This document shows positions 13,608 through 32,949 of a stretch of 64,000 nt of DNA, piece after piece. The DNA lies in the IMG/VR virus record IMGVR_UViG_3300025098_000012, positions 1-64,000 of that record. The stretch is one strand, 5' to 3'. Position 1 is the first letter of the stretch; each line of letters begins with the position of its first letter. The position numbers and the translations under genes are program-made. The notes beneath the pieces were generated by a model. It saw only the letters and a list, made by a program, of their open reading frames with translations. It was not told where the DNA came from and did no database searches.

Positions 13608-13666
13608 GTTATCACCAGTAGTCTAGTGGTTATTTACTAGACTACCGATGATAAATAAACTAACGA

Positions 13667-15997: not shown

Positions 15998-16058
15998 ATA
16001 TATCTCTCTCTCTTTCCGATAGTTTACAAGAGAGATATGAATATAAATAAACTAACGA

Positions 16059-18449: not shown

Positions 18450-18626
18450 ATCTATCTCGCTTTCTGATGGGAATGAAGTTTACAGAAGATACCGACTATA
18501 AACGAACTATAAATATCTGAAAGAGGATAAAAGTCTTGTCCTGTCGGGTTGTGTGTGATAAGGTAGGGGCTGACTTGGATAGATGTCCAATAAGTCAACC
18601 TTTAACCCGATAACTCGGAGACACAA

Positions 18627-19899: not shown

Positions 19900-20268
19900 C
19901 TACGGTCTTAAGCCTAAATCTAACAGGGTCTTGTAAACGACTTTATTGACTTCTTTAAGGTCATCAGTCTTTTTAATGACCCGACCATTGACCTCTACGA
20001 TTAAGTTTTTGTAGTCATATCCAGATCCACTGCTAGTGAAACCACTGATAGAAATCTTAGTCTTTGAGGCTTCAACTTTGATAACCTTCTCTCCCTTTCG
20101 GTCGAGGACACTAGTTACTTTGTGTTGCCCTTTCTTGAACATCCACTGTAGCTGTTTCTCAAATCGGCTGAGATCTTGCCACCCAATGTGGTTACTTAGT
20201 AGTCCAAAGAGCTTTGCTTCCATGTACCTAGAAGCGACTCTTTTACTAGAATTTTGATTACTCATCAT
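19900..20268 (-). CDS. Small basic protein with RVASRY leader
   Basis: N-terminal SKRVASRYMEA; overlaps the upstream gene. Confidence 0.7.
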   Translation of the reverse strand: MMSNQNSSKRVASRYMEAKLFGLLSNHIGWQDLSRFEKQLQWMFKKGQHKVTSVLDRKGEKVIKVEASKTKISISGFTSSGSGYDYKNLIVEVNGRVIKKTDDLKEVNKVVYKTLLDLGLRP

Positions 20269-20818
20269 CTGCCTCTTTCTTAGGTTCGGGTGTATCTTCT
20301 ACACCTAGTGATTTCTTGACCTTTGCTTTGAACATCTTGATTACGAACGCATTGATTGCACCAGCACAAGCACCCATATACACATCAATCATCATAAATG
20401 GCTTTGATAAGGTATAGGCGATCCCTGCTCCTGTTAGGACTGCAAAGAGTCTTATTACAGCGTCTGATTTCTCATTGCAGGTTTTGAAGATGAAAGGCTT
20501 AATGATCTGAGTCAGAGCGAGACTCAAGATAGCCGCTACCACTACAAGATAAGCATGACCTACAAAGACATCTTGCATCGTTGGTCTAGTTTCTGATTTC
20601 AAATCAATCGACTCTGCTATGTGTTTACAGGAAACACCACTTTCAGTGATCTCACATTCTTGGTTTTCTGATCCACACAGAAGTTCATTCCCCTCGATGA
20701 TTTCGCAGAGGTCAGCTCCTTCTTCCCCTTTACTACAGAGGATTGTATGAAGATCAACGAACTGACAGTTATCTGGTAGATTAACTAGTGGCTCACTTAT
20801 TGGGATATACTTTTCCAT
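20258..20818 (-). CDS. Membrane protein, holin-like candidate (Cys-rich N-terminus, ~3 TM segments, basic/acidic tail)
   Basis: Hydrophobic stretches YLVVVAAILSLALTQII, AVIRLFAVLTGAGIAYTL, VYMGACAGAINAFVI; charged C-terminus; late motif and SD hairpin upstream. Confidence 0.45.
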   Translation of the reverse strand: MEKYIPISEPLVNLPDNCQFVDLHTILCSKGEEGADLCEIIEGNELLCGSENQECEITESGVSCKHIAESIDLKSETRPTMQDVFVGHAYLVVVAAILSLALTQIIKPFIFKTCNEKSDAVIRLFAVLTGAGIAYTLSKPFMMIDVYMGACAGAINAFVIKMFKAKVKKSLGVEDTPEPKKEADDE

Positions 20819-20878
20819 GTTTTTACCTCGCTTCGATTTTTCAATAAAGCGAGGCGATAAAGAAACTATTAAGCTCTC

Positions 20879-21412
20879 TTACAAATGAGGGGTTCTGTCT
20901 ATTACGATGACATCACCCTCTGAGTGATACTTTTTAGCGAATGACTTCCATACCCTTAGAGCCTTATCAGAGGTAGACTTTTTGTGGCAGTAGTTAGGCA
21001 TGAACAGCAAAGGCAACCTACCATGTTTAAGGAACACTTCTTTGACCACCTCAACATACATTTGAACTCCACACCTCTGGCCTTGTAGGTCTGGGTGGAG
21101 ATAAGAATTGACAACCTCTACAACAAGAACCACAGGTTCATCTTTACTGCTATCATATCGAAACATCTCGTCCTCAAACCAATACTCTTCGGATAACTTT
21201 TCAATGTCATCTGCACAAGCAAAGTGTCCTCTACCCATCTCCTCAAGAGTGTAAGTGCCTACATGGGCTTCACAGTGTCCTCTGTATTCACCATCGACTC
21301 TTAACTCAACACTAACTTTACCACCATCGCTAGACACAACTTCGATAGTGATGTTGCCCTTTTGGTATTTAGCTTTCATGTAGCGACTAGCGACTCTTTG
21401 ATAAGGCTTCAT
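20879..21412 (-). CDS. GNAT-fold acetyltransferase-like protein with RVASRY leader
   Basis: GNAT motif-A-like SYLHPDLQGQRCGVQMY followed by SDKALRVWKSF. Confidence 0.55.
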   Translation of the reverse strand: MKPYQRVASRYMKAKYQKGNITIEVVSSDGGKVSVELRVDGEYRGHCEAHVGTYTLEEMGRGHFACADDIEKLSEEYWFEDEMFRYDSSKDEPVVLVVEVVNSYLHPDLQGQRCGVQMYVEVVKEVFLKHGRLPLLFMPNYCHKKSTSDKALRVWKSFAKKYHSEGDVIVIDRTPHL

Positions 21413-22314
21413 ACTGGTTGTCCCTGTTCGTTTACTAAACCTTTAGTGTAGAGGGCATATAACTGTATGCCAACAGCAGGAACTAAGATAGCGTTCCAAC
21501 CGATTGATAGAGACTTAGCGAGCCAACCACCAGGTATGCCTGGGAATAAAAGACTTACGATAAATCCAATCCCACTTTCGGGTAGACTTTCAAGTAAGTC
21601 CGTCCACGAGATCATGCCTAGAAATCCTTTTATCAAGTCTGAGATCTTCCAACTGATCTCTGTAACATTGATCCATATGACCCAATAGAGATATGCTTTA
21701 GCAGGCATCGTAATGAGCTTCAGCAAAGGGTGCTTCTCTAAAAAGTTATCTATCCATTCCGACATATTTTTTGCTCTGCCGACCACAGGTGTGATCGTCT
21801 TTGACAACCATTTACCTAGTTCACCTGTCTTTCCTCCATGCTTTTCAAGTACGCTTTCAATAATGGAAGTGAAGGTAGGAGCGTTAGATGCGTATAGGAA
21901 CAGAAAGTGAATGATCTTACTGTCTTTCTTCATCTTCTTCTTTAGATTACCCCACCATCTCGCACCCTCGTCTAAGAGGTTTTGAAACTTCTTCGATAGT
22001 TCAAAGTAGAGCTTTGCAGGGTTCGTTGATGTGATCCCTAAAACCTCTTTGAACTTTTCCCAAAGTTTAGGAGCTTTTTGAAACGCTTGGTACAGCTCTC
22101 TTAGCTTCTTACCTAGACCTTTGATGATCGCTGTTTTGTTGTGAGCTTGTCGGAGCATACCCTCGCCAAACACGCTCAATACTCGGACATCTATCTCACG
22201 AGTGATTGTGCTTGAGACTCTAGTGTTGGGGCTGTTTTGGATCGCCCACATTGACGCTCTTAATGAAACATTTCTATGGTAATGTCGAGTAGCGACTCTC
22301 TGATATGGCTTCAT
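21409..22314 (-). CDS. Putative virion protein with RVATRHY leader and hydrophobic C-terminal helices
   Basis: MKPYQRVATRHY; C-terminal AYLYWVIWINV and GIGFIVSLLFPGIPGGWL...AILVPAVGIQLYAL; SD AAGGAG. Confidence 0.7.
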   Translation of the reverse strand: MKPYQRVATRHYHRNVSLRASMWAIQNSPNTRVSSTITREIDVRVLSVFGEGMLRQAHNKTAIIKGLGKKLRELYQAFQKAPKLWEKFKEVLGITSTNPAKLYFELSKKFQNLLDEGARWWGNLKKKMKKDSKIIHFLFLYASNAPTFTSIIESVLEKHGGKTGELGKWLSKTITPVVGRAKNMSEWIDNFLEKHPLLKLITMPAKAYLYWVIWINVTEISWKISDLIKGFLGMISWTDLLESLPESGIGFIVSLLFPGIPGGWLAKSLSIGWNAILVPAVGIQLYALYTKGLVNEQGQPV

Positions 22315-22377
22315 ATTTATACTCCTTTAATAAGTACAATAGGATGCTCATAAATAAGTTATTGAAAGGAGTCGGTC

Positions 22378-22752
22378 ATGGGAGCAGGTGTAATGCTATT
22401 ATGTGGAAACAAAACCCTCATAATGAAGAGGGACCACTACAAACACGATAAATGGTCGGGTTATTGGAACTTTCCAGGAGGTCAAGGAGAGCCAAATGAA
22501 ACGACCTATCAGACAGCTCTAAGAGAGACTGAAGAAGAGACAGGCATCACACCCGATCAATATAAAGTTGTAGATCATGTAGAGGACAAGATTTACACGA
22601 TGTATGTCGGGGTGTGTAAGGAAGAGATCGTACCTGTTTTAGATCACGAGCATACGGAGTGGGAGTGGATAGTCATCTCTAAGATACCTAGTATGACTCG
22701 TGAGATGCACCCCAAAGATTGGCGAGGGTTTAAGAAGTATTATCGGCTTTAG
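22378..22752 (+). CDS. NUDIX hydrolase
   Basis: Nudix box GGQGEPNETTYQTALRETEEETG. Confidence 0.93.
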   Translation: MGAGVMLLCGNKTLIMKRDHYKHDKWSGYWNFPGGQGEPNETTYQTALRETEEETGITPDQYKVVDHVEDKIYTMYVGVCKEEIVPVLDHEHTEWEWIVISKIPSMTREMHPKDWRGFKKYYRL

Positions 22753-22755
22753 AAA

Positions 22756-23853
22756 TCACCAGACTTGAAAGTGAACACCTAAAGACCAAGTGTTCGACCC
22801 ATCAGTTCCGTAAACCCAACCAATACCAGGAGCGATGTTGAGGTTTTTACCCATGATGTAAGGATGCCATGTACCCATCAATCCTAGATACTGATTGGAC
22901 TCGGTTAGAGAAAAGTTAGCACCTAAACGATACTGACCTTTAACAAAGTTGACGAAACTCCCCCCTATAGATAGCCCAAACTCCCCCCCTTGATAAGTTG
23001 ACCCTACAAGTAAGCTCGGCTCGAACATCTTTAGCGTTAACCCTAAACCACCTGCGGGTACTTGGGGTATATAGATGAGTTGAGGATCAAGATTGGGATC
23101 ACCAGAATACATTTCGGACTCAAGACCCTCTATATTAATAAACTTTCCTTGATCATCAAAGTACCCACCATAAATGTGTATGCCTTGGTTCTGTACAGCA
23201 CCACTACCTAAACGAGATTGGTCTTCGCCATAACTAATCGCTACTACTTTAAACGCTAAGTTGAAGTCTACACCCGAACCTTCACCAGTCCAAAGATTTC
23301 TACTTGTAAACGAGTAAACAGGTTTACCATGTAAACGGAAAGGTGATTCCCATGTAAACTTGAAAGGTTGACACCTTTCGTCTGTTCGGTTCTCACACCA
23401 CTGTTGATCTTGTGTACTTACACCTCTCCAATCTTGAGGTGGTGGGGTTGTGGGTTTTTCTCTGTCTGTGAAGTCTCCGATGCGTGTTACACCTGCTTCT
23501 ACCCTTGACTCCATACGAACAAATCTTCGACTAATCGCATTGATTTTCGCTCCTGTCTCAGAGGTGTATCTGTCTATAGCCTGTTGTGTTCTTTGATCAA
23601 GACCACTAATGATTTCTGACGCTCTTTGTTCAAGCGTAGCTCGATCAACCATCTGAGACTGCACAGTTCCTAGTTTGGTATTTATCGCCGCAATTTTCGT
23701 AGCGTTATCATTAAGAACTCCATTTAGCTGATCTTGGATCGTAGCGTCCATCTGTTGCATTTTGTAGACAGACCAAGCGTTGCCCCCTACAGAAACCAAG
23801 AACAGGCTCAATAGAGCGTAAATACCATATTTTAGGTTCGCCAACTCAACCAT
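22756..23853 (-). CDS. Membrane-anchored coiled-coil protein with C-terminal beta-barrel-like domain (spanin-like candidate)
   Basis: N-terminal TM (YGIYALLSLFLVSVGGNAW), heptad-rich helical region, C-terminal amphipathic strands ending WSLGVHFQVW; SD AAGGAG. Confidence 0.6.
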   Translation of the reverse strand: MVELANLKYGIYALLSLFLVSVGGNAWSVYKMQQMDATIQDQLNGVLNDNATKIAAINTKLGTVQSQMVDRATLEQRASEIISGLDQRTQQAIDRYTSETGAKINAISRRFVRMESRVEAGVTRIGDFTDREKPTTPPPQDWRGVSTQDQQWCENRTDERCQPFKFTWESPFRLHGKPVYSFTSRNLWTGEGSGVDFNLAFKVVAISYGEDQSRLGSGAVQNQGIHIYGGYFDDQGKFINIEGLESEMYSGDPNLDPQLIYIPQVPAGGLGLTLKMFEPSLLVGSTYQGGEFGLSIGGSFVNFVKGQYRLGANFSLTESNQYLGLMGTWHPYIMGKNLNIAPGIGWVYGTDGSNTWSLGVHFQVW

Positions 23854-23894
23854 AGTAAATCTCCTTCGTTTAGATGGAGATACTATACCATGTC

Positions 23895-24227
23895 TTAATG
23901 AGCAAACACTCGTAGAACTGTTGTCCCCTCAATAAGATAGAGTCCACCTAGTCGTAGATTTTGTGTAGTACGCTGAAGGCTGTGAACCATATCTTTGAAG
24001 GTATTCATCTCTTTTGGGTCTACTTTTAGTACAATAAAACCACCATCGTGAATACCATCGTATGCAGACATAGTGGTCTTTTCCACAGAGATGAGATGAG
24101 GGTATGTGTGATCTTCAATGTAGTCTTGAGCATGGAGTCCAAGCTCGTTGAGTTTTTCTTCAAAAGAAGCGTCCTGCATCGTGTTTACTTTTCTCGATCT
24201 ACTCTCAAAGCGATTTATCATAGACAC
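23895..24227 (-). CDS. Hypothetical protein
   Basis: 110-aa ORF, last of a closely packed minus-strand run. Confidence 0.6.
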   Translation of the reverse strand: MSMINRFESRSRKVNTMQDASFEEKLNELGLHAQDYIEDHTYPHLISVEKTTMSAYDGIHDGGFIVLKVDPKEMNTFKDMVHSLQRTTQNLRLGGLYLIEGTTVLRVFAH

Positions 24228-24228
24228 C

Positions 24229-24474
24229 CTATTCTTTATCTTCTACGACAATGATCTCTCGTGTCGTCTTACCTGTGTTGTAGTCGATGTTCTCTCGAAC
24301 CCGAAAGACAGGTTCGGGGGCAGGCTGTGGTGGTCGGCTGTAGTAGCGAACTTCATTTCGCCACCGACCACCAACTTCGACCCATACAGTCTCTCCATTT
24401 TCCATTCGTTTGTAAGGCATATTCATTCTCCTTTTTAGATTGTTTTGATAACTTCCCACCAGCCTGGACCACAT
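24229..24474 (-). CDS. Small hypothetical protein
   Basis: Closely packed in the operon; real start probably the internal ATG after AAGGAG (~24426). Confidence 0.5.
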   Translation of the reverse strand: MWSRLVGSYQNNLKRRMNMPYKRMENGETVWVEVGGRWRNEVRYYSRPPQPAPEPVFRVRENIDYNTGKTTREIIVVEDKE

Positions 24475-24671
24475 TGTTCGGTACGCTGTAGGACTAAGGT
24501 TTGTGAGCCAAGAGGTTCAAGGTATTCACGATGTGTTTTGTCATATCCATCGCCACCTTTGGAGCGTAAGAGAGCGTCTGCTGAACAGACAAGCATCTCG
24601 TTAAGCCCAAAGTATTTAGCTCCGAATAATCCACACTGATCGACATCTGTGTAGATCTGCATACTCGCCAC
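24435..24671 (-). CDS. Small hypothetical protein
   Basis: Immediately downstream of the DUF1874-like gene. Confidence 0.5.
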   Translation of the reverse strand: MASMQIYTDVDQCGLFGAKYFGLNEMLVCSADALLRSKGGDGYDKTHREYLEPLGSQTLVLQRTEQCGPGWWEVIKTI

Positions 24672-24674
24672 CTG

Positions 24675-25067
24675 TCAATGCTGAAGCATTGAGAGGGGGA
24701 TCTGCTGGATCACTTGGAAGATACACTCTTTAAAGTGTTCGACTACGAACTCTGTGTCGTTTCGTGAACTTGCTGAGGGCTGTATGATGACCACCACATC
24801 ACCGTCAGAGAGGCTGACATTACCACCGACACACTCGCTCTTGGTCAGACCTTGAGCGAGAGCCACAGTAGACTCATGGCGAGGGTTGATAGCGTTGGAG
24901 AAGGTTATGTTCGACCCCATTTCAGCGAGACTGACGATAGCCTTAGCTTGGTCAACATCAATGTTGACTTTGTGGCATAGAGCTTCATCAATTAGCATCC
25001 GATTGCTGAAAGCCGAGCTGAGGATGATTCGTGATGTAGGTGCTTTGAAGATGTTTGCGATTGTCAT
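24675..25067 (-). CDS. DUF1874 / AcrIII-1-like cyclic oligoadenylate ring nuclease candidate
   Basis: RIILSSAFSNRML and NAINPRHESTVALAQGL match the family signatures (YLxNAFSxNML; SxGHxSTxxL); VSLSDGDVVVIIQ follows; SD AAAGGAG. Confidence 0.62.
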   Translation of the reverse strand: MTIANIFKAPTSRIILSSAFSNRMLIDEALCHKVNIDVDQAKAIVSLAEMGSNITFSNAINPRHESTVALAQGLTKSECVGGNVSLSDGDVVVIIQPSASSRNDTEFVVEHFKECIFQVIQQIPLSMLQH

Positions 25068-25112
25068 GTGGTTCTCCTTTCAAGAGAGAGATTGTGTTGA
25101 TGACATAAAGGT

Positions 25113-25128
25113 ATAAATAAGGGGTTAC
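25113..25128 (-). promoter_or_regulatory. Early-type motif copy 1 (GTAACCCCTTATTTAT)
   Basis: 61 nt upstream of the DUF1874-like start; near-identical copies at 35157, 35386 and 36028. Confidence 0.6.
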
Positions 25129-25188
25129 GCTTTGCCTTTTCTCATATAATAAGAGGATGCAAGCTGTACTTATAAGGAGGTGCGACAT

Positions 25189-27918
25189 ATGTTTGCCGAT
25201 ATGCTTGAGTCATTAAGACGACCAAATATACAACCCAAGTTGTGGATGAAAGATTGCGAGTTAATCTTAGGCACAAAGGAAAACCTAGACCAATGTATTG
25301 ATGAGTGTATCAACAGCGTTGCGTATGGGCTTGACCTTGAGACAACAGGTCTTGATAATCGTGTGTTCAACGGACGCACAAGAGATACGATTGTAGGGGT
25401 CTGCTTGTCAGCCCATAAGGATAAGGGGTACTATTTCCCTGTTGGTCATCAAGAGGGTGTGGAACATAACATTCCTTGGAGATTGATGTATCCTGCACTT
25501 GAGCGTCTGCTTGACCTCTCTGTGAAAGCAGAGCCTATATTCCACAACGCCGCTTTTGACCAAGAGTTTTTGGAGTTCAACGAGTACAAGTCGGGTCTTG
25601 GTGAGGAGCGTTGGGACTCATTTGAATGGCACGACACCTATATCATTCAGTATCTCTTGAACCCTCGTGAAAAAGGTGGTCGAGGACTAAAGCATTTAAC
25701 TAATGCCCACCTTGAGCGAGAGATGATTGAGCTATCAGATCTTATGCCCGATGCTCCCGACAAGAACTACTCCAAACTTGATGTGAGTTGGGAACCATGT
25801 GTTTGGTATGCCGCTAGTGATGCAATGTGTACGCTTGGACTATGGGAAGTACTTTATAAGAAGTACACCGAAGCTAAAGAACACACTAACTCGATGTATA
25901 AGTTAGAGCGTATGTGTCTACTTTCAACTCGTTGGATGCACAGAAATCGTGTCTACATTGATCGAGACACAGCCTTAAAGTATAGCCAACAGGGGCAGAA
26001 GCTATGGTTCGACTCTCTGATTGATGTCTATGATGGAGCAAAAGAAATCTTAGGTCGAGACATTACCCCTAACTATGTTCGAGTCCTTAAAGGAGATCTG
26101 AAGGGAGAAAACAAGTTTAACCACATGGAAGTGGAGGGGATGAGCTATAAGACTCGTGTAGACGAAGCTCGTAAAGAAGCCTCTCGACTTTACCCCGATG
26201 AAAAGGGAGTAGTCACTAAGGCTGTGAAGATTATCGGTAAGAGTGTAGGTACAGAGGAGATTGAGTTTCCACTTACTTATGACATCCTATCCCCTCAAAA
26301 GCTCGGCTTGTTATTTAGAGAGTTGAGTGTTCCAGGTCTTAAGGCGAGTGAAAAATCGGGTCAGGTCGTTACTTCCAAAGACATTCTTGAAGAGGTCATT
26401 GAGAAGGCTTCTGATGACTTTCCATTTATGGCTAAGGTTAAGACCTTTCGTGAGCTTGGGAAGGCAATGGGTCAGTATCTCATTCCATTTGTAGAAGATG
26501 TTGGACCAGATGGGACTCTCAAGCCTAAGTTTGATCAGTTTGCCGCTGACACAGGTCGTTTTTCATGTAAGACGAATAGTAAGCCTTGGAAAGTTAAAGA
26601 TGGAGGGTGTCGTGTTCCCTTTCAAGGCATACCTGCTACCTATGACCCAAATAAACCCGAAGCTGTTGCTAAGATGCGTTCTTGTGTGGCTGTGCGTGAT
26701 GACGATTGGTGGTTAGCGGCCATTGATTACGCAGGTGTAGAGCTTCGGCTAGTTACGAACTTGAGTCTTGAGCCTAAGTGGATCAAGGCTTTCTTTGAAT
26801 GTTCAGAATGTGGCACAGCTTACCCACAAGAAATTCAAGAAGACGGATTCGCCAAAGCACCTCCATCTAACTGCGTGAACTGTGGGTCTGATAAGATTGG
26901 AGACTTACATACGATCACAGCAGTTGCGTTTTATGGCGAGGGAGCTAAGAAGCGTGATGATTGGAAAGCGTTAAGAGGTAATGGTAAGGGTTGCAACTTT
27001 GCTTTGTCTTATGGTGGTACAGGTAAGGCTGTTCAGCGTACTATTGGTTGTTCAGCCGAAGAAGCAGATGAGAAGTTCAAGAAGTTTACATCAACTTATA
27101 GTGAACTGACTAAATGGTGGTCTAAGCAACACAACTTTGGTCGTAAGCATGGATATGTAAAGACAGGTATGGGTCGTGTTCAACCATTACCCGACATCAA
27201 GTCTGATGACTTTAGGTTTAAATCCAAAGATGAGCGTAAGGCTGTTAATGGTCCAGTACAGGGTACGAGTGCTGATGTCACCAAGTTGGCGATGAGCTTC
27301 ATCTACCAAGAGACTAAGAAGCGTGGTTGGCAAGATAAACTGATGATGATCTTGACCGTCCATGACGAAATCGTGTTCGAGATCCATAAGTCGATCTTGA
27401 AAGAGGCGATTGATATGATCTCCGAGATGATGACTCGCAACAAAGTGATTAAGCGTCTAGGTTGGCGAGTGCCTTTACTTGTCGATGTTGAGCTTGGTAA
27501 GGATTGGACTGTTCCTTTTGATGTGAAAGATGTGATTGCAGGAGAAGCAGGGGATAAGGTCATTAACGCTAAGTACAAGTGCAAGGATTGTGGTGAAAAG
27601 ACTCCTCGTGACCCTAAACCGACTGCGTGTATGCACTGTGGTTCGACTAACATTAAAATTGATTACAAAGATGACTTCATTGCCAAGATCAAGAAGCAGA
27701 CGGAACAACTTTATGCCGACTATGGGGTAAATCCCGATGAAGTTGTCAAAGAGGTGGTTGTAGAAGACCCTGTTGAGAAATCGTCCGATAAGCCCACCTT
27801 TTGTGTTGAGGGACTGACGGAAGAAATCGCAAAAAACCTGTCCGATTGGATTAAATCGCAAGATGGTGAGTATGATGTGGTATATGAAGGACGGAGTATT
27901 ATTGCATTATTAGAATGA
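25189..27918 (+). CDS. polA: Family A DNA polymerase with 3'-5' exonuclease and two zinc-ribbon insertions
   Basis: Exo motifs DLETTG, HNAAFD, YAASD; polymerase motifs A (IDYAGVELR), B (RGNGKGCNFALSYG), C (TVHDEIV). ATG 25189 has AAGGAGG 8 nt upstream (the track uses GTG 25180). Confidence 0.96.
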   Translation: MFADMLESLRRPNIQPKLWMKDCELILGTKENLDQCIDECINSVAYGLDLETTGLDNRVFNGRTRDTIVGVCLSAHKDKGYYFPVGHQEGVEHNIPWRLMYPALERLLDLSVKAEPIFHNAAFDQEFLEFNEYKSGLGEERWDSFEWHDTYIIQYLLNPREKGGRGLKHLTNAHLEREMIELSDLMPDAPDKNYSKLDVSWEPCVWYAASDAMCTLGLWEVLYKKYTEAKEHTNSMYKLERMCLLSTRWMHRNRVYIDRDTALKYSQQGQKLWFDSLIDVYDGAKEILGRDITPNYVRVLKGDLKGENKFNHMEVEGMSYKTRVDEARKEASRLYPDEKGVVTKAVKIIGKSVGTEEIEFPLTYDILSPQKLGLLFRELSVPGLKASEKSGQVVTSKDILEEVIEKASDDFPFMAKVKTFRELGKAMGQYLIPFVEDVGPDGTLKPKFDQFAADTGRFSCKTNSKPWKVKDGGCRVPFQGIPATYDPNKPEAVAKMRSCVAVRDDDWWLAAIDYAGVELRLVTNLSLEPKWIKAFFECSECGTAYPQEIQEDGFAKAPPSNCVNCGSDKIGDLHTITAVAFYGEGAKKRDDWKALRGNGKGCNFALSYGGTGKAVQRTIGCSAEEADEKFKKFTSTYSELTKWWSKQHNFGRKHGYVKTGMGRVQPLPDIKSDDFRFKSKDERKAVNGPVQGTSADVTKLAMSFIYQETKKRGWQDKLMMILTVHDEIVFEIHKSILKEAIDMISEMMTRNKVIKRLGWRVPLLVDVELGKDWTVPFDVKDVIAGEAGDKVINAKYKCKDCGEKTPRDPKPTACMHCGSTNIKIDYKDDFIAKIKKQTEQLYADYGVNPDEVVKEVVVEDPVEKSSDKPTFCVEGLTEEIAKNLSDWIKSQDGEYDVVYEGRSIIALLE

Positions 27919-27928
27919 GAGTAAGCAT

Positions 27929-28516
27929 ATGAAGCCCAATAAAGATTTCTTTTTAGAGTGTAATGAGGGTGGGTTAATGAGTCCACCAGAGTTTGAACGC
28001 ACTTTTTGTAATCAATGTAAGAACCGACAATGTGTTCGAGCTGATTGGGCTTTTAGCACTTGGGATAAGCGTATCCTTACTCAAGTAGATCGCTTATTAA
28101 CAAACCCTAACATCGTACTTCAAGCAGAAGCGAGTCGATGGGAAGGTGTTTCAGACTTTGAGGGTTTTCAAGAGCCACAAGAGATAGAGGTGTGGGGTGT
28201 CCCTCAAGAACCACAAGCACCTTTGATTGTAGATGATGAGGAAGATACAATCCCTGCTCCTCCTGTAGAACCTCCAGAGATTGAAGAGGAAGAAGATGCT
28301 GTGGTAACCTCAGCACCTAAGATCGACTTACAGCCTCAGCCGATACCTCAACCACAGGTGTATCATAACCCTTTGAATACACCTCCACAAGAAATCACGA
28401 TAGGTGAAGCACCTAAGCCTGCTCAAACACAGTCTCGCCCTAAGAGGTTTCAAGAAGACCCCTGGGCAGTTTCTGAAACGCTACCTGTAGGTGGCAAGTT
28501 TAAGATGGGGAAGTAA
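27929..28516 (+). CDS. Hypothetical protein: Cys-cluster N-terminus, Pro/Glu-rich disordered C-half
   Basis: CNQCKNRQC motif; PAPPVEPPEIEEEED linker. Confidence 0.7.
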   Translation: MKPNKDFFLECNEGGLMSPPEFERTFCNQCKNRQCVRADWAFSTWDKRILTQVDRLLTNPNIVLQAEASRWEGVSDFEGFQEPQEIEVWGVPQEPQAPLIVDDEEDTIPAPPVEPPEIEEEEDAVVTSAPKIDLQPQPIPQPQVYHNPLNTPPQEITIGEAPKPAQTQSRPKRFQEDPWAVSETLPVGGKFKMGK

Positions 28517-28518
28517 GT

Positions 28519-28722
28519 ATGATAGAGCTAGTAATATGTAAACACATCCGTAATGGGTACAAAGTCGTTTTACCTAAAAGCATGAATGTAAAGGTCTTAC
28601 CTAAATACACTAAAGGGATTGTATCTAGCCCATCCGAGTTGAAGCCTAATGATAAGATTAAGTTTGTAGGGTGGGTGTCAGCTTCAAATGATGATCGTTC
28701 ATTATGGCGAGATTATCTTTGA
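28519..28722 (+). CDS. Small hypothetical protein
   Basis: Fills the gap in a tightly packed operon. Confidence 0.45.
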   Translation: MIELVICKHIRNGYKVVLPKSMNVKVLPKYTKGIVSSPSELKPNDKIKFVGWVSASNDDRSLWRDYL

Positions 28723-29072
28723 AATATGAGCGTCTTGTTAAGCCATCTAAAGTCCTTCCTCCCGACCTTATAAGAGGCTATTATGAACAAGACCTTAAGA
28801 GTATTAAAGAGATCGAGGCTTGGCTCTCTAAGAATGGGTTGACCATATTATTTACGCTTGGGGAAGCCTACGGAAATGAGAGTGTTTATTTAGGTGAAGA
28901 TAGTCGTGTCTATATAGGAACTGAAAAGATCCCTCGCATTGACTGGTTAAAGAAACAGATCTTAAGAGTAAGTACAGAGCTTTTACAACAAGCGATTAGA
29001 GAGGGTTGGACTCGCAAAAAAATGTTTGAAGTGCTTAAAAAAAGGTCTGAAGAAGAGAACAAGATAGTATAA
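28704..29072 (+). CDS. Hypothetical protein
   Basis: 122-aa ORF in the polymerase operon. Confidence 0.6.
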   Translation: MARLSLKYERLVKPSKVLPPDLIRGYYEQDLKSIKEIEAWLSKNGLTILFTLGEAYGNESVYLGEDSRVYIGTEKIPRIDWLKKQILRVSTELLQQAIREGWTRKKMFEVLKKRSEEENKIV

Positions 29073-29134
29073 TGAGCGTGTTGAGTGGGCGATCCACTCA
29101 TAAACTCAAACCATACACAACAGGAGAAATCACT

Positions 29135-29323
29135 ATGAGTGGTATCGCTGATCGTATTGCAAATCTAAAGCAACTTCTCACTGACCTTGAGTCAGACGCA
29201 ACCAAGACAGACAGTGGTAATAAGGCCGCAGGTACTCGTGTTCGTAAGACACTTCAAGAAGTGGTCAACGAGTCTAAAGAGATCCGTAAGGCTGTCATCG
29301 AGGCTCGTAATAGCGACAGCTAA
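29135..29323 (+). CDS. Histone H1-like nucleoid protein (Hc1 family)
   Basis: Signature GNKAAGTRVRK within a helical hairpin; ATG 29135 follows AGGAG (in frame with track ORF 29072). Confidence 0.8.
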   Translation: MSGIADRIANLKQLLTDLESDATKTDSGNKAAGTRVRKTLQEVVNESKEIRKAVIEARNSDS

Positions 29324-29338
29324 TCGAACCTCTATACA

Positions 29339-29355
29339 ACACACACACACACACA
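29339..29355 (+). repeat. (AC)8A dinucleotide microsatellite
   Basis: ACACACACACACACACA just upstream of the SD of 29371-29679. Confidence 0.9.
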
Positions 29356-29370
29356 GAAAGGACATGACCT

Positions 29371-29679
29371 ATGTCTAACTTAAAAGGCGATCTAGCCCCT
29401 AAGCCAAATAAGACACCTTATGAGCTTCGGCTTGAGATTTTACATCTCGCTCAACACATCGTTGAAGACAATGTTGAAAAACAAATTCAGTATATGCACT
29501 CACAAGGCGACATTGCAGGTAGCTTTTATGATCGTCATGAAGATACGATTGGTGTAGCTGCCGCTGAGTTGATTGCCTCAGCGAAAGAAAACATTGAGGG
29601 TTTGAAAATGCCCCCAATGGGGGTTGACGAAGTTTTGAGTATTGCGAAAAAGTTAAATAACTTTGTCTCCAATGGGTGA
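29371..29679 (+). CDS. Phage hypothetical protein (KTPYELRLEIL motif)
   Basis: N-terminal PYE(L/I)RL motif of a kind I recall from myovirus hypotheticals; last gene before a terminator. Confidence 0.65.
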   Translation: MSNLKGDLAPKPNKTPYELRLEILHLAQHIVEDNVEKQIQYMHSQGDIAGSFYDRHEDTIGVAAAELIASAKENIEGLKMPPMGVDEVLSIAKKLNNFVSNG

Positions 29680-29717
29680 CAAGTCATATAACTAAAGCAT
29701 ATTCATTTGTGTCGGAG

Positions 29718-29756
29718 AAACCCTCGATTGCCCCAGTGGTGGTCGGGGGTTTTTCT
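29718..29756. terminator. Probable (bidirectional) intrinsic terminator
   Basis: AAACCCTCGATTGCC-loop-GGTGGTCGGGGGTTTTTT stem with G-U pairs and a U tract, between convergent genes. Confidence 0.7.
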
Positions 29757-30113
29757 TTAGAGGTCGCAGAACTGACCCCACCAATCAGTATAGGTGACTT
29801 TGACCACATTAGATTTCTCGATGTGCCTTCGGCAATACTTACAAGGTCGAGCCATTGTCATCGTACCGTCTTTGAGAAATCTAATGACCTCAAGGCGATC
29901 TCCTTTTTGAGTATGCCTAAGAGCATCCATTTCAGCGTGTAGGTTGGAAACGAGAGTTCCGTCTTTAACCCTCCGAGCAAACCTTAAGTCTGTCTTGCTT
30001 GAGTTTACACCGATGTAAACAGGCTTCTTTTTTCTGAATACAATACAAGCGACATGGTACTTTTCACCATTAGACAATGCCATTCTCATAGCTTGTTTAT
30101 AAATGCGTTTCAT
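29757..30113 (-). CDS. Zinc-dependent cytidine/dCMP deaminase-fold protein
   Basis: HAEMDAL and RPCKYC motifs; YIGVN. Confidence 0.85.
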   Translation of the reverse strand: MKRIYKQAMRMALSNGEKYHVACIVFRKKKPVYIGVNSSKTDLRFARRVKDGTLVSNLHAEMDALRHTQKGDRLEVIRFLKDGTMTMARPCKYCRRHIEKSNVVKVTYTDWWGQFCDL

Positions 30114-30182
30114 AATAGGAGGTACATTATGTGTTATTATGACCCGATACTTTTGATGTGTATATGCGAGATTATTGAAGAG

Positions 30183-30611
30183 CTACTTGTAGTTTGATTT
30201 ATCGAGAGCGTCCTCTAAGGCTTTCGCATTGAAGCCATAGTCGTGATACTTTTTAAGGACTCTCCAAAGATACTCTTCTTCTGGAGATATGAGATTTTTG
30301 TTCTCGGTGTAATAGACATGGGCTGTTACATATTCACCATTATCACACATGACATCCATGATTGAACAAGAACACCCTTCAAATGGTTCGGGTAGCTCCC
30401 AATGATCTACGGTATAGAGGACACCCTCTAAGTAGTCGTTCATCTTCCCTGCTATCATAGAGCAGAAGCCTTGCTCCCCTTCGCTTTTGTTCGAGAAGAT
30501 CAGTTTGAACCCTCTAATCATTGCAAACTTATAAAATCGTGCTGATGGGTATTGATCGACCATAGTGTGTTCTTCGAGGCTTAATCCGTAAGCAAAGTAG
30601 AGTGCTTTCAT
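30183..30611 (-). CDS. Gamma-glutamylcyclotransferase (AIG2-like)
   Basis: LYFAYGLSL, LEGVLY, FEG, AHVYY, PEEEYL; start ATG 30611 after GAAAGGA (track start 30662). Confidence 0.8.
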   Translation of the reverse strand: MKALYFAYGLSLEEHTMVDQYPSARFYKFAMIRGFKLIFSNKSEGEQGFCSMIAGKMNDYLEGVLYTVDHWELPEPFEGCSCSIMDVMCDNGEYVTAHVYYTENKNLISPEEEYLWRVLKKYHDYGFNAKALEDALDKSNYK

Positions 30612-30622
30612 CGCATTTCCTT

Positions 30623-30943
30623 TCAGTGATGAACGACAAGGGCTGCCGCTCCGCATAGACAAAGTGCTAAAACACCTTTCCAGTTAAACCCGAAAAAGTA
30701 GCAGTTAAGAATAAGGTCTACAGTTAAGCTACACAATCCCCAAGTAACTCCTGCTTTCCACACATCACCCATTTCAATAAGTTTCCACCAAGCGTACAGG
30801 GTCATATAGTTGGTGAACAAGCTCGTGTAGAGCCACCATTTAAATGGCGACCAATCGAACCCATAAATGACTTTGGCATTTCCTTTGAACCAAAACACTA
30901 TATTAGCGAGGCATAACAGACCCACAGGGATGATATAATTCAT
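30623..30943 (-). CDS. Small four-TM membrane protein (SMR/DMT-like)
   Basis: Four hydrophobic segments in 106 aa. Confidence 0.55.
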   Translation of the reverse strand: MNYIIPVGLLCLANIVFWFKGNAKVIYGFDWSPFKWWLYTSLFTNYMTLYAWWKLIEMGDVWKAGVTWGLCSLTVDLILNCYFFGFNWKGVLALCLCGAAALVVHH

Positions 30944-31450
30944 TTAATGCACCAGACAGTCTACTTCAAAATCGTACCCCAAGAAAGAGGGTACAATCTG
31001 ATGTGGGTCTGTTAACAGTGAAGGTTCTGATTGAAAATCTATGTCCGATAGAAATCCCTCGAACCCTTCTCCTTTAAAGTAAGACATCCCAAAAATTGAC
31101 TGTTCTCCACTCCTGCTATCTTCAATCAAGCACCAAAAAACGAAACCTATACTTTTTTCTTCTTCGTACATTTTTTGATGTGCTATAAAAGACCAAAATT
31201 CAGGATTAACATCTTGCAGGATTTCTGGTAAAGAGAATCCGAGCATAACTTTATTATGAAGTAAATCATCACCTGTCATAATAGACAAATGAGGAGGTAA
31301 AGTAGATACATCAAGACCGTAATCTCTAGCACCCGTTACCGTTGTGCTTATCATGTTATAGGCTTCGTTATGAAAGTCAAAAGGGGAAATGTTCATGTCA
31401 ACTCCATTAAGATCTGCTAGGTCTATCCAACAAAAACTCCTCACAAGCAA
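30944..31450 (-). CDS. Hypothetical protein
   Basis: AT-rich ORF; true start probably ATG ~31396 after GGAG. Confidence 0.55.
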   Translation of the reverse strand: MLVRSFCWIDLADLNGVDMNISPFDFHNEAYNMISTTVTGARDYGLDVSTLPPHLSIMTGDDLLHNKVMLGFSLPEILQDVNPEFWSFIAHQKMYEEEKSIGFVFWCLIEDSRSGEQSIFGMSYFKGEGFEGFLSDIDFQSEPSLLTDPHQIVPSFLGYDFEVDCLVH

Positions 31451-31649
31451 GGAAGCTATCAGATCAGTTATTTCTTATTGTACTTATAGAAAAGACGATA
31501 GGGTATGCTCCGATAAAGATTTAGCGAAAAAACTCAAGCAAGTAGATCGAGAGATTGGTAGATTACTAGAGTATGTTCAATCCTTAGAGGGTCAAACTCG
31601 AAGAACACTGCGAGAAGAACGACTTAAAAAAGAAAGAGAGAATAGATAA
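31389..31649 (+). CDS. Small coiled-coil hypothetical protein
   Basis: Coupled (TAATG) to the FmdB-like gene. Confidence 0.5.
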   Translation: MFMSTPLRSARSIQQKLLTSKEAIRSVISYCTYRKDDRVCSDKDLAKKLKQVDREIGRLLEYVQSLEGQTRRTLREERLKKERENR

Positions 31650-31831
31650 TGCCTACTTATAACTACAGATGCAAAAACGAAGAGTGTAAACATGAGTTTC
31701 AAGCGATGCACAAGATGAGCGACCCACCACCCCCATGCCCTAAATGTAGTGGTGAACAGGTTGAGAAGCTGATAAAGGGTATGAACTTTGTCTTAAAAGG
31801 TAGTGGATGGTTCAATTCTGGTGGATACTGA
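31649..31831 (+). CDS. FmdB-family zinc-ribbon protein
   Basis: MPTYNYRC...C...PCPKC...VEKLI...FVLKGSGWF. Confidence 0.9.
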   Translation: MPTYNYRCKNEECKHEFQAMHKMSDPPPPCPKCSGEQVEKLIKGMNFVLKGSGWFNSGGY

Positions 31832-32111
31832 TCTGCTTAAGTCTCTTGTCAACCATCCCAAATGGGTATGGCAAATGGGCCTGCTAGGTTTCCCCTACTT
31901 TAAACCGACACAGAGGGTTAGGAAGATAGGAGTTGGGGATGACTCTTGGCTTCCTGCTTTAGATGATCCTGTGACTCTCGGCTACTTACACCACCTGTAT
32001 GTAATCAATAATGGGTCTGTAAGGCGAGATGGTGAGCTATGGGTAAGCTCACATGGGGTTGAGGGAAAAGACTTAGCAGATGTGCTTGTAGAGTCTTTCC
32101 TCAAACTTTAA
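31803..32111 (+). CDS. Hypothetical protein
   Basis: Overlaps the FmdB-like gene; protein-like composition. Confidence 0.55.
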   Translation: MDGSILVDTDLLKSLVNHPKWVWQMGLLGFPYFKPTQRVRKIGVGDDSWLPALDDPVTLGYLHHLYVINNGSVRRDGELWVSSHGVEGKDLADVLVESFLKL

Positions 32112-32115
32112 TAGT

Positions 32116-32442
32116 TTAAAATCTAGGTTCTCTACCTCGACACCACTTAGACTGTTCCTCTGTCCAATAGAGCCTAGCCTTACCACGCTTCTTCTTTAGA
32201 GCCATTTCAGCTTTCATGGCTTCTGATCTGTTAGCGTATGGACCATAGGTACACATTAACACCCAAGGTCGGTGCTTTGATGTGTACTTAGCACCACCTT
32301 TGATTTCTCCCTGGTGCTGTCTCAGCCTACGGTTAACATCTGTAGTGCAACCCACATAGAAAAAACCTGGTAGTTGTTTACCTGTCTTAGCTGATCTTCT
32401 CATCTGCTGACTCTGAATAACATATACGACCCATTCGCTCAT
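32116..32442 (-). CDS. GIY-YIG endonuclease (SLX1/YhbQ-like)
   Basis: WVVYVI...FYVGCTTDVNRRLRQH.G..KGGAKYT...RPW...EAMKAE; start ATG 32442 after AAGGA (track start 32550). Confidence 0.9.
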   Translation of the reverse strand: MSEWVVYVIQSQQMRRSAKTGKQLPGFFYVGCTTDVNRRLRQHQGEIKGGAKYTSKHRPWVLMCTYGPYANRSEAMKAEMALKKKRGKARLYWTEEQSKWCRGREPRF

Positions 32443-32469
32443 TTGTAGTTCCTTTATACACTGCTTTAG

Positions 32470-32949
32470 GTGATCTATTATACTAAAGGAAATATGATGA
32501 GAAATCATAACAAGATGGCAAGTCGAGTTGCATATCGCTACATGAAACAAGCAGGTCTATTGAGTAAGATCGTAGATTTCTTTACCGAGAGTCCTCGTGA
32601 GAAAGAGAAGAAGCCTGTGTTTGATGTCGCTAAAGTCTGGGTGACAGCAGGTATCTATGGGGCTACTATGGGTTGGGTATCAAAGACTCTTAAGCTCAAA
32701 GGCAAAGATACTGCGATCATTGACTACAAAGGGGATAATCTCAAGCTCTCCATCTCACAAGAACGAGTTAGGGGGATGAAGGACAATGGGGGCATCAAAG
32801 GAGACTTCTTTGTAGTGATTTCTTTGACTGGTGTTGATAAGAACATACCTAAGAGTCAGTTAGATAAAGTCTTAGCAGGTATTCTTAGAGAGGTTCGGCT
32901 TGAACCCGACTTTACCGAAACTCCTGTTGAACACCCCAATATGCGTTAG
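32470..32949 (+). CDS. Small basic protein with RVAYRYMKQA leader
   Basis: Leader shared with the 19900/20879/21409 genes; likely ATG ~32494. Confidence 0.7.
   Translation: MIYYTKGNMMRNHNKMASRVAYRYMKQAGLLSKIVDFFTESPREKEKKPVFDVAKVWVTAGIYGATMGWVSKTLKLKGKDTAIIDYKGDNLKLSISQERVRGMKDNGGIKGDFFVVISLTGVDKNIPKSQLDKVLAGILREVRLEPDFTETPVEHPNMR

What the first reader, a model, noticed from the sequence alone, without database searches (positions are those of the whole stretch)
19900..32949. Shared N-terminal RVA(S/T/Y)R(Y/H) leader on otherwise unrelated proteins: possible capsid-targeting/protease-cleaved signal
Seen: SKRVASRYMEA (19900), MKPYQRVASRYMKA (20879), MKPYQRVATRHY (21409; later RQAHNKTA), ASRVAYRYMKQA (32470). 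The 13667/16059 paralogues also end a conserved ~45-aa leader in GMKKQA. Downstream domains differ (GNAT, membrane helices, small basic domains), and most of these genes sit behind the late-type motif. Established: T4 internal proteins carry a short capsid-targeting sequence removed by the prohead protease. Inference: a modular packaging tag with cleavage after K-[Q/T]-A or similar, marking cargo injected with the DNA.
Basis: partly seen in the sequence, partly recalled or inferred. Interest (0 to 1): 0.68.

Follow-up and report, generated by a model that had tools for sequence, protein, structure and literature searches.

The report
Shared docking peptide on jumbo-phage proteins
An uncultured giant phage puts the same short peptide (R-V-A-x-R-Y-M/L) on at least eight unrelated late proteins, at their start, end or in linkers; it most likely loads them into the forming head, as phage T4's capsid-targeting tag does, but no experiment has tested this.

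Summary
RVA.R[YH] occurs four times in the six-frame translation of the window, always at an ORF start. It occurs seven times in the 226.7-kb contig, against 0.05 expected. With variants, at least 14 copies sit on at least eight unrelated protein families. Copies use different codons, so selection acts on the peptide.

The motif is not only N-terminal. It also ends proteins and sits in linkers. It comes and goes as a 10-17-residue indel, and it changes position on the same cargo domain in a relative.

Carrier genes lie beside the portal and the head-maturation protease, or behind a late promoter-like motif that also precedes the decoration/capsid and baseplate operons. Cargo includes a GNAT-like protein, an RNA-repair HAD domain, HExxH proteins and a membrane protein.

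N-terminal leaders are often followed by K-[K/Q/T]-A (10 of 21 leader proteins against 19 of 257 others). The same pattern is invariant in the protease N-terminus and at two scaffold sites, and recalls herpesvirus assemblin sites (YLQA|, VQA|S).

A second leader family (MRRSASE.IRNLE.RIARLE) tags 11 more genes here and 33 in a 376-kb relative.

A capsid-targeting, protease-trimmed tag is the best reading (about 0.45). There are no proteomic data and no cultured close relative.

The parts
20215..20268 (-). Leader A on the 122-aa protein (gene 19900-20268): MMSNQNSSKRVASRYMEA
   Evidence: The orthologue motif is conserved in L006 and L010. In L004, L005 and L014 the same 113-aa domain is fused behind an 835-aa N-terminal part, with the motif at the junction.
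21371..21412 (-). Leader A on the 177-aa GNAT-like protein (gene 20879-21412): MKPYQRVASRYMKA
   Evidence: GNAT lead: Atlas feature score 0.94. A paralogue with the same leader lies at contig 186306-186854.
22279..22314 (-). Leader A on the 301-aa protein with C-terminal membrane helices (gene 21409-22314): MKPYQRVATRHY
22129..22137 (-). K-T-A, residues 60-62 of the 301-aa protein; candidate end of a longer propeptide
   Evidence: sequence pattern only
32494..32553 (+). Leader A on the 159-aa ORF (32470-32949), read from its likely start: MMRNHNKMASRVAYRYMKQA
   Evidence: The orthologue in the 376-kb relative G001 keeps the leader.
15863..15997 (-). 45-residue shared leader, ending in MKKQA, of the 776-aa paralogue (gene 13667-15997)
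18315..18449 (-). 45-residue shared leader, ending in MKKQA, of the 796-aa paralogue (gene 16059-18449)
   Evidence: Orthologues at 60-80% identity occur in 12 viral contigs.
20857..20868 (-). Late promoter-like motif TAGTTTCTTTAT ahead of the 186-aa/122-aa gene pair
32446..32457 (+). Late promoter-like motif TAGTTCCTTTAT ahead of the 159-aa gene
16043..16054 (-). Late promoter-like motif ahead of the 776-aa gene
18498..18509 (-). Late promoter-like motif ahead of the 796-aa gene
22350..22361 (-). Degenerate copy (TAACTTATTTAT, 2 mismatches) ahead of the 301-aa/177-aa gene pair
13651..13662 (-). The same promoter-like motif ahead of the baseplate-wedge genes (12567-13607 and 9298-12570). This ties the motif to structural, late expression.

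Best explanation
Leader A, roughly [basic]-R-V-A-x-R-Y-[M/L]-[K/E]-x-A, is a short transferable docking peptide. Its residue pattern (V, A, Y, M spaced i, i+1, i+4, i+5) fits a basic amphipathic helix; no prediction settled its structure. During late infection it probably recruits otherwise unrelated proteins into the assembling prohead, by binding the scaffold core or the inner face of the phage-G-type HK97 capsid shell. N-terminal copies are then probably trimmed by the head-maturation protease after a small residue, typically K-[K/Q/T]-A. Terminal or linker copies may simply stay attached. The cargo is a set of probable effector or ejection proteins delivered with the DNA: two GNAT-like proteins, an RNA-repair-type HAD domain, a possible cyclic phosphodiesterase, three HExxH proteins next to the portal gene, a membrane protein, and a 1081-aa charged protein upstream of the protease. 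Shown here: the motif, its non-randomness, selection at the peptide level, modularity, conservation in relatives, genomic and promoter association with head genes, and K[KQT]A enrichment. Inferred: the binding partner, packaging, cleavage and injection.
For: (1) Non-random and acting at the peptide level. (2) At least 14 copies on at least 8 unrelated families: N-terminal (contig 20241, 21397, 22299, 32524, 186839, 196167, 202427, 133414, 225048), C-terminal (224990, 177281, 226575) and in linkers (222265, 174209). (3) Modularity. In the conserved module just upstream of the protease, the motif is a 10-17-residue indel between an SH3-like and a zinc-ribbon domain; five relatives lack it, and AlphaFold2 places it in a low-confidence segment between two better-modelled domains. 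The HAD domain carries the motif N-terminally here, but after the domain and at the C-terminus in LR745208.1. The motif sits at a fusion junction in L004, L005 and L014. (4) Head-module context. The order here is 259-aa protein (C-terminal motif), 1081-aa protein (motif), protease (phrog_18299, E=1.8e-15), acidic scaffold, decoration protein, capsid protein; three motif-bearing HExxH paralogues lie about 2 kb downstream of the portal, across a small group of opposite-strand genes. In LR745208.1 the motif proteins lie between portal and protease in one contiguous block. (5) The late promoter-like motif occurs 39 times in the contig, about 17 of them before leader genes and others before the baseplate and decoration/capsid operons. 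(6) Conserved in relatives: 15 hits in the complete 376-kb G001, 4-5 in each of three fragments, and recognisable copies in LR745208.1, whose PolA is only 46% identical. (7) K[KQT]A in residues 8-80: 10 of 21 leader proteins against 19 of 257 others (Fisher p=5e-6); permuted tripeptides give 1-2 of 21. KKQA occurs 6 times against 0.8 expected. L-x-x-[QKR]-A is invariant in the protease N-terminus across 24 distinct N-terminal sequences from relatives at 43-94% identity. L-K-K-A|M, and K-K-A|S 45 residues from the C-terminus, are invariant in the scaffold. This parallels the YLQA| and VQA|S sites of a herpesvirus assemblin, whose M-site frees the scaffold from the capsid protein (PMC4498786). 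(8) Cargo type: HAD_SAK_1, E=6.7e-19; GNAT lead. This matches the T4 pattern of diverse defence-related internal proteins that share only a targeting sequence (PMC3012670).
Against: There are no virion proteomes, N-terminomics data or cultured close relatives. About half of the leader proteins lack a strict K[KQT]A. C-terminal and internal copies do not fit the T4 model. The protease has no Pfam family and no sequence match in the PDB, and its AlphaFold2 model is poor, so its specificity is unknown; the SPN3US paper describes its protease's cleavage motif without the letters in the passages read, and, from memory, the characterised T4, phiKZ and SPN3US proteases cut after Glu. The contig also encodes ClpP-like and GroEL-like proteins that could be alternative hubs. 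Motif A is rare (0-3 weak hits) in four other large relatives with near-identical capsid proteins (95-99% identity), and absent from Tunturi_5 and phage G. If a conserved receptor exists, it does not force retention of the tag.
Confidence: 0.45

Rival explanations
1. The tag docks proteins into the head, or elsewhere in the virion, but is not cut off. The nearby K[KQT]A is compositional or serves another purpose.
For: C-terminal copies end within 5-8 residues of the stop codon, so cleavage after them would remove almost nothing. Half of the leader proteins lack a strict K[KQT]A. SPN3US mass spectrometry found 42 head proteins that are not cleaved (PMC10052503).
Against: K[KQT]A is enriched after leaders relative to permuted tripeptides. 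The same pattern is invariant in the protease and the scaffold.
Confidence: 0.17
2. The peptide is a docking or recognition motif for a hub unrelated to the capsid interior. Candidates are the phage ClpP-like protease (a degron), the GroEL-like chaperonin, a tail or baseplate assembly factor, or a host protein.
For: ClpP-like (PF00574, E=1e-25) and GroEL-like genes are present. The T4 capsid protein N-terminus directs proteins to GroEL (cited in PMC10052503). [quoted passage not shown] The window cluster lies next to tail and baseplate genes.
Against: The best-conserved copies flank the portal and the head-maturation protease. Degrons recognised at either end or inside a protein, all with the same strict sequence, would be unusual.
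Confidence: 0.18
3. The peptide is a membrane-targeting amphipathic helix, like those at the ends of MinD or MreB, that brings late proteins to the inner membrane.
For: Basic, amphipathic residue pattern. It occurs at either terminus. One carrier (301 aa) and a neighbour (186 aa) are membrane proteins.
Against: Invariant V-A and near-invariant R and Y across paralogues and distant relatives point to a specific protein partner rather than lipid binding. Established knowledge: membrane-targeting helices tolerate wide sequence variation.
Confidence: 0.08
4. There is no shared function. The similarity is a by-product of recombination at gene starts, or all carriers descend from one domain whose first helix is the motif.
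For: MKPYQRVA(S/T) is identical on three genes. The 122-aa and 159-aa proteins may be remote homologues (24% over 137 aa, E=0.011), and p177 and p191 are paralogues.
Against: Synonymous and non-adjacent codon differences between copies. C-terminal and linker copies. The indel within a conserved protein. Retention in genomes whose PolA is only 46% identical. No similarity among most carriers.
Confidence: 0.05

Closest known systems
Phage T4 capsid targeting sequence (CTS) of internal proteins IPI-III and Alt
   Same: A short conserved peptide is the only thing shared by a diverse set of proteins. In T4 it directs them into the scaffolding core, and the cargo is defence-related (PMC3012670; Mullaney & Black 1996 as cited in PMC10052503). 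Here too the tag is about 10-14 residues, sits on unrelated late proteins, and lies in a genome with a dedicated head-maturation protease. From memory only: the T4 CTS begins MKTYQ, and three copies here begin MKPYQ.
   Different: Here the tag also occurs at C-termini and in linkers. The candidate cleavage site ends in Ala rather than Glu. At least two leader families coexist, and they tag far more genes: at least 25 here and about 48 in the relative G001. There is no sequence homology to T4 proteins, and packaging is unproven.
Propeptides of head and ejection proteins in giant phages phiKZ, 201phi2-1 and SPN3US
   Same: Giant phages in which many head proteins carry N-terminal propeptides of 20-254 residues, removed by one prohead protease that also cuts itself (PMC10052503). 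The protease here gave tblastn hits in 34 Erwinia and 10 Pseudomonas phage records, whose kind was not examined.
   Different: From memory, those propeptides share only a cleavage motif ending in Glu, not a conserved docking sequence. The capsid protein here is phage-G-like rather than phiKZ-like.
Herpesvirus assemblin R- and M-sites and the C-terminal capsid-binding tail of the scaffold
   Same: Cleavage after Ala in Y-L-Q-A| and V-Q-A|S contexts. The M-site lies a few dozen residues from the scaffold C-terminus and frees the scaffold from the major capsid protein (PMC4498786). Here the candidate sites are RYMKQA|, LYLQA|, an invariant KKA|S 45 residues from the scaffold C-terminus, and an invariant site in the protease N-terminus.
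   Different: This is a pattern resemblance only. The fold and catalytic triad of the protease here could not be determined.
Cargo-loading peptides of encapsulins and encapsulation peptides of bacterial microcompartments
   Same: Short peptides joined by flexible linkers to unrelated cargo, working at either terminus. Encapsulin shells have the HK97 fold, as this capsid protein does (established knowledge; weak PF05065 hit and precomputed PF25209).
   Different: No sequence similarity. Those systems are cellular compartments without DNA packaging or maturation proteolysis. Binding to the shell was not established here.

Membership tests
T4-type capsid targeting sequence system | One short conserved peptide shared by otherwise unrelated phage proteins | tested here: met
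T4-type capsid targeting sequence system | The tag is strictly at the N-terminus | tested here: not met
   C-terminal copies at contig 224990, 177281 and 226575; linker copies at 222265 and 174209; the same is seen in G001.
T4-type capsid targeting sequence system | The tag ends in the protease consensus (L/I-x-E in T4, from memory) and is removed in the prohead | tested here: not met
   The leaders do not end in [LI]xE. They are followed by K-[KQT]-A or another small residue. Actual removal cannot be tested with these tools.
T4-type capsid targeting sequence system | Tagged proteins are present in proheads or virions and are injected | not testable with these tools
   No proteome and no cultured close relative. 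The nearest cultured phages, Tunturi_5 and phage G, lack the motif.
phiKZ/SPN3US-type head-protein propeptides | A dedicated prohead protease encoded in the head module | tested here: met
   phrog_18299, E=1.8e-15. The order protease, scaffold, decoration protein, capsid protein matches Tunturi_5 and phage G.
phiKZ/SPN3US-type head-protein propeptides | Propeptides bounded by a cleavage motif ending in Glu (from memory) | tested here: not met
   No conserved x-x-E follows the leaders.
Herpesvirus assemblin-type maturation | Sites with Ala at P1 in Y-[LV]-[QK]-A or V-x-A contexts, including one near the scaffold C-terminus | tested here: met
   Sequence pattern only: RYMKQA, LYLQA, scaffold K475-K-A477|S, protease L37..A41, compared with PMC4498786.
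Herpesvirus assemblin-type maturation | Assemblin / T4 gp21 fold with a Ser-His-(His/Asp) triad | tested here: inconclusive
   AlphaFold2 mean pLDDT 50; no PDB sequence match; no Pfam family.
Encapsulin / microcompartment targeting peptides | A short peptide on a flexible linker, functional at either terminus of unrelated cargo | tested here: met
   Positions; indel in a linker; low-confidence inter-domain segment. Function at each position is inferred.
Encapsulin / microcompartment targeting peptides | The peptide binds the inner face of the HK97-fold shell protein | not testable with these tools
   No conclusive computational test was obtained; see Tried and rejected.

The most novel reading that the evidence does not exclude
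A widespread clade of uncultured jumbo phages uses position-independent encapsidation peptides: at least two families, RVAxRY[ML] and MRRSASE.IRNLE.RIARLE. These load dozens of proteins per genome into the head, about 48 genes in a 376-kb member. The cargo includes RNA-repair enzymes and acetyltransferases, so a ready-made counter-defence proteome would be injected with the DNA. The tags would be trimmed by a head protease with herpesvirus-like Ala-P1 specificity.
Probability: 0.3. Interest if true: 0.8.

Novelty: new variant of a known kind. Interest (0 to 1): 0.62.

Why it matters
If the reading is right, the tags are a sequence-readable label for the packaged and injected proteome of a large, environmentally common and uncultured jumbo-phage clade. 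More than 2,100 capsid-protein homologues were found, at 92-100% identity across the 80 best viral contigs. Effector cargo could then be predicted from sequence alone. The tags would also extend the T4 capsid-targeting principle to tags that work at either end of a protein, link phage and herpesvirus maturation-site logic, and supply a compact tag for loading foreign proteins into large capsids. If the partner turns out not to be the capsid, this is still an unusually clear short linear motif network in a virus, with an unknown hub.

Tried and rejected
1. Complex prediction. Chains: capsid protein, scaffold residues 1-180, and the first 40 residues of the 177-aa protein. The tool returned no answer (score 0.30 against a mark of 0.32), so it counts neither for nor against binding.

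2. AlphaFold2 of the protease from a 29-sequence alignment gave mean pLDDT 50, too poor for a fold search. A profile search of PDB sequences found nothing relevant.

3. Further homologue searches returned only close relatives in the listed top 120: 63-94% identity for the protease and 88-96% for the capsid protein.

4. A Foldseek search of the SH3/zinc-ribbon module against viral models gave no match with E below 0.001.

5. Pfam and PHROGs gave no family for most carriers.

6. The Atlas leads for the 653-aa HExxH protein (polyvalent-protein domains LPD23, DUF6321; scores 0.75-0.82) were not confirmed. Neither family matches anywhere in the contig.

7. A weak Pfam hit 'Lock_Gag1-like' on a leader-B ORF lay partly in a probably untranslated N-terminal extension and vanished when the true start was used. 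No paper was found on it.

8. No homology between the 1081-aa protein and the Tunturi_5 'DNA ejection protein', nor between the 653-aa protein and phage G gp15.

9. A loose motif match inside the capsid protein itself (RVARVFM) falls in a stretch partly conserved among capsid homologues and was excluded as unrelated.

10. A literature search for LR745208 found nothing.

11. Not tried: sequencing-run and read tools, which do not bear on packaging.

Full report
WHAT THE WINDOW IS. The window is the first 64 kb of a single 226,698-bp linear viral contig with 43% G+C. CheckV rates it about 73% complete. It encodes the following:
- a family-A DNA polymerase (25180-27918);
- DnaB-like and other helicases, a sliding clamp and clamp loader, a UvsX-like recombinase and ribonucleotide reductase;
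- a large terminase and a portal protein (contig 217408-219084);
- a head-maturation protease (172551-173990);
- baseplate-wedge proteins (window 9298-13607).

The major capsid protein (169304-170182) is 38% identical to phage G gp27, 46% to the Tunturi_5 major head protein and 89% to a 485-kb uncultured phage, LR745208.1. It has more than 2,100 homologues in public data. It is 92-100% identical in the 80 best viral contigs, which come from records of up to 376 kb. The element is therefore an uncultured jumbo myovirus with a phage-G-type head, from a large environmental clade.

THE OBSERVATION.
- RVA.R[YH] occurs exactly four times in the six-frame translation of the window, each within 9-19 codons of the upstream stop.
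- In the whole contig it occurs seven times in predicted proteins. Residue shuffles give a mean of 0.047 (maximum 1 in 300), and the 239 other orderings of the same letters give a mean of 0.06.
- Relaxing the pattern gives at least 14 copies.
- Copies use different codons for the same residues, including AGT versus TCT for serine, so conservation is on the peptide rather than on DNA or RNA.
- An all-against-all BLASTP of the carriers finds only three paralogue groups (177/191 aa; the 620/653/558-aa HExxH trio; the 776/796-aa pair) and one weak pair (122/159 aa). All other carriers share only the motif.

THE MOTIF IS NOT ONLY A LEADER.
- N-terminal copies start at contig positions 20241, 21397, 22299, 32524, 186839, 196167, 202427, 133414 and 225048.
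- Copies at 224990 and 177281 end their proteins, 14 and 11 residues before the stop. The copy at 226575 lies near a C-terminus.
- The copy at 222265 follows a long low-complexity linker between the two HExxH halves of the 620-aa protein.
- The copy at 174209 lies 71 residues before the end of a 1081-aa charged protein.

THREE RESULTS SHOW IT IS AN AUTONOMOUS MODULE.
(a) The C-terminal roughly 190 residues of the 1081-aa protein form a conserved module: an SH3-like domain, a linker and a zinc ribbon. This module is a separate gene in some relatives. In an 18-sequence alignment the motif is an insertion of 10-17 residues in the linker. Five relatives lack it and one retains only a remnant, while the flanking K-[QKT]-A-[IL]-Y-W is kept. 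AlphaFold2 models the two domains at pLDDT 73-82 and the motif segment below 50, mostly as helix.
(b) The HAD domain of the protein at 196167 (PF10307, HAD_SAK_1, E=6.7e-19) is 35% identical (E=5e-32) to the extreme N-terminus of a 508-aa protein of LR745208.1. That protein has no N-terminal tag, but it has motif-like sequences directly after the domain and at its C-terminus.
(c) In three viral contigs the 113-residue body of the window's 122-aa protein is fused behind an 835-residue N-terminal part, with the motif exactly at the junction.

CONTEXT. On the minus strand the gene order is:
- a 259-aa protein with a C-terminal motif;
- the 1081-aa protein with the motif;
- the protease (phrog_18299, E=1.8e-15);
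- a very acidic 522-aa scaffold-like protein with an EF-hand;
- a 197-aa protein at the position of phage G's decoration protein;
- the capsid protein.

The portal gene is followed, about 2 kb downstream and across a small group of opposite-strand genes, by the three HExxH paralogues. These carry four motif copies between them. In LR745208.1 the portal, the motif-bearing proteins, the protease, the scaffold, the decoration protein and the capsid protein form one contiguous block, and the motif is retained there, for example as HRVASAYIKQA and as an N-terminal ADRVASRFLQA.

A 12-nt promoter-like motif, TAG[TA]T..TTTAT, occurs 39 times in the contig. In the window the stricter form gives 6 hits against 0.24 expected. 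It precedes the baseplate genes, the decoration/capsid operon, the portal region and about 17 leader-bearing genes or operons. The carriers are therefore late genes embedded in, or co-regulated with, the structural modules.

CONSERVATION. A profile of the 14 copies gave the following:

| Record | Motif-A hits |
|---|---|
| G001 (376 kb, complete) | 15, again N-terminal, C-terminal and internal |
| Three smaller fragments | 4-5 each |
| LR745208.1 | 3 weak but plausible |
| Four other large relatives | 0-3 weak |
| Tunturi_5 | 0 |
| Phage G | 0 |

The tag system is lineage-specific and expands and contracts.

THE CANDIDATE CLEAVAGE SITE.
- KQA occurs 24 times against 11 expected, and KKQA 6 times against 0.8.
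- K[KQT]A falls within residues 8-80 of 10 of 21 leader-bearing proteins against 19 of 257 others (Fisher p=5e-6). Permuted tripeptides give 1-2 of 21.
- The remaining leaders are followed by related small-residue endings (MKA, MEA, RQA, KEA, RSA).
- The protease N-terminus carries S-L-K-K-Q-A|E. Across 24 distinct N-terminal sequences from relatives at 43-94% identity the pattern L-x-x-[QKR]-A is kept, and L37 and A41 are invariant in a 29-sequence alignment of orthologues at 48-95% identity.
- The scaffold has invariant L105-K-K-A108|M and K475-K-A477|S. The second site lies 45 residues before a strongly conserved C-terminal tail.
- This mirrors herpesvirus assemblin logic. The pseudorabies R- and M-sites are given as YLQA-T and VQA-S, and M-site cleavage frees the scaffold from the capsid protein (PMC4498786).
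- All of this is pattern evidence. The protease has no Pfam family, no PDB sequence match and a poor model.

CARGO.
- Two GNAT-like paralogues (Atlas feature score 0.94, 183 shared features; no Pfam hit).
- An RNA-repair-type HAD domain, and a borderline 2H cyclic-phosphodiesterase match (PF08302, 22.5 bits against a cut-off of 23).
- Three HExxH proteins.
- A protein with C-terminal membrane helices.
- Several small proteins of unknown function.
- No replication or housekeeping enzyme carries the tag.

This profile resembles the T4 situation, described as a highly diverse set of defence proteins sharing only a capsid targeting sequence that brings them into the scaffolding core (PMC3012670). 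It also resembles the cleaved ejection proteins of giant phages (PMC10052503).

INTERPRETATION. I conclude that leader A is a short linear docking motif under strong peptide-level selection, used by late proteins. Shown: it exists, is non-random, is modular, is conserved, and is associated with head genes, late promoters and K[KQT]A. Inferred:
- its partner is in the prohead (probability about 0.5);
- N-terminal copies are removed by the head protease (about 0.4);
- the cargo is injected.

Rivals are a non-cleaved virion tag; a tag for another hub, such as the phage's ClpP-like or GroEL-like proteins; a membrane-binding helix; and recombinational or homologous ancestry. The last is largely excluded.

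COMPARISON AND NOVELTY. It works most like the T4 capsid targeting sequence. It fails membership on strict N-terminal position and on the Glu-ending cleavage consensus. It resembles encapsulin and microcompartment targeting peptides in being independent of position. Its candidate sites resemble herpesvirus assemblin sites. I rate it a new variant of a known kind, with unusual breadth (see the second leader family under 'noticed in passing').

Noticed in passing
G000 contig 89703, 114467, 124799, 136483, 138842, 154027, 164598, 167394, 185417, 212356, 219109 (outside the window; loci L001, L002, L016-L021): A second shared N-terminal leader, MRRSA(S/N)E.I(R/K)(N/D)LE.RIARLE. Its hydrophobic residues have heptad-like spacing. 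It sits on 11 small proteins that are unrelated outside the leader by N-terminal comparison, mostly right behind the late promoter-like motif and often followed by K(Q/T)A or another small residue. The profile finds 33 copies in the 376-kb relative G001 and 15 in a 107-kb fragment, but none in LR745208.1, Tunturi_5 or phage G.
   Followed up: partly
G000 contig 169304-170182 (L002:3305-4183, minus strand): The major capsid protein is extraordinarily conserved. It is 100% identical to that of G001, whose 796-aa protein orthologue is only 78% identical. It is 92-100% identical across 80 viral contigs, and 89% identical to LR745208.1, whose PolA is 46% and protease 43% identical.
   Followed up: partly
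G000 contig 196167 and 201897-202451 (L021): Two motif-A carriers look like RNA-repair enzymes: HAD_SAK_1 (PF10307, E=6.7e-19) and a borderline tRNA-ligase-type cyclic phosphodiesterase domain (PF08302, 22.5 bits against a cut-off of 23). This suggests cargo that counters RNA-cleaving defences.
   Followed up: partly
G000 contig 188865-190064 (L021:5866-7065, plus strand): Strong match (E=1e-86) to phrog_1211, annotated '2-aminooxy adenylosuccinate synthetase'. From memory this looks PurZ-like, so the phage might replace adenine with 2-aminoadenine in its DNA. Not examined further.
   Followed up: no
G000 contig 170944-172512 (L002:4945-6513, minus strand): The acidic scaffold-like protein contains an EF-hand calcium-binding motif (PF13202, E=1.7e-9) and two internal repeats containing RVARLADNAVQVG-like sequence. 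An EF-hand in a scaffolding protein is unusual.
   Followed up: no
G000 contig 212806-213522 and 144581-145960: The phage encodes a ClpP-like protease (PF00574, E=1e-25) next to a leader-B gene, and a GroEL-like chaperonin. [quoted passage not shown]
   Followed up: no
G000 contig 125207-128329 (L018:2207-5329, minus strand): The large terminase is 1040 aa, with the terminase matches in its C-terminal half and an endonuclease-like match (phrog_4645) in the N-terminal part; this may be an inserted or fused nuclease module. One protease homologue elsewhere carries intein domains (P0365).
   Followed up: no
window 37574-38749, 41164-42369, 42403-43608; contig 141514-144600: Three paralogous methyltransferase-like genes of about 400 aa lie in the window. 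Further along the contig is an array of short paralogous ORFs that share either an MIITILRKPLEGSV... start or an MIEIKIGDCTQRL...DPPYG start; they look like repeated or split methyltransferase genes.
   Followed up: no
L004:7465-7584, L005, L014 (viral contigs related to window 19900-20268): In these relatives the homologue of the 122-aa protein is the C-terminal end of a 948-aa ORF. The N-terminal 835 residues were not characterised.
   Followed up: no
G000 contig 172551-173990, C-terminal 20 residues of the protease: The protease ends in a conserved amphipathic tail, (L/I)(V/I)(R/K)(L/F)(A/S)K(L/I)LS(L), which loosely resembles motif A (R-L-A-x-L-L). It could be the protease's own incorporation signal.
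   Followed up: partly
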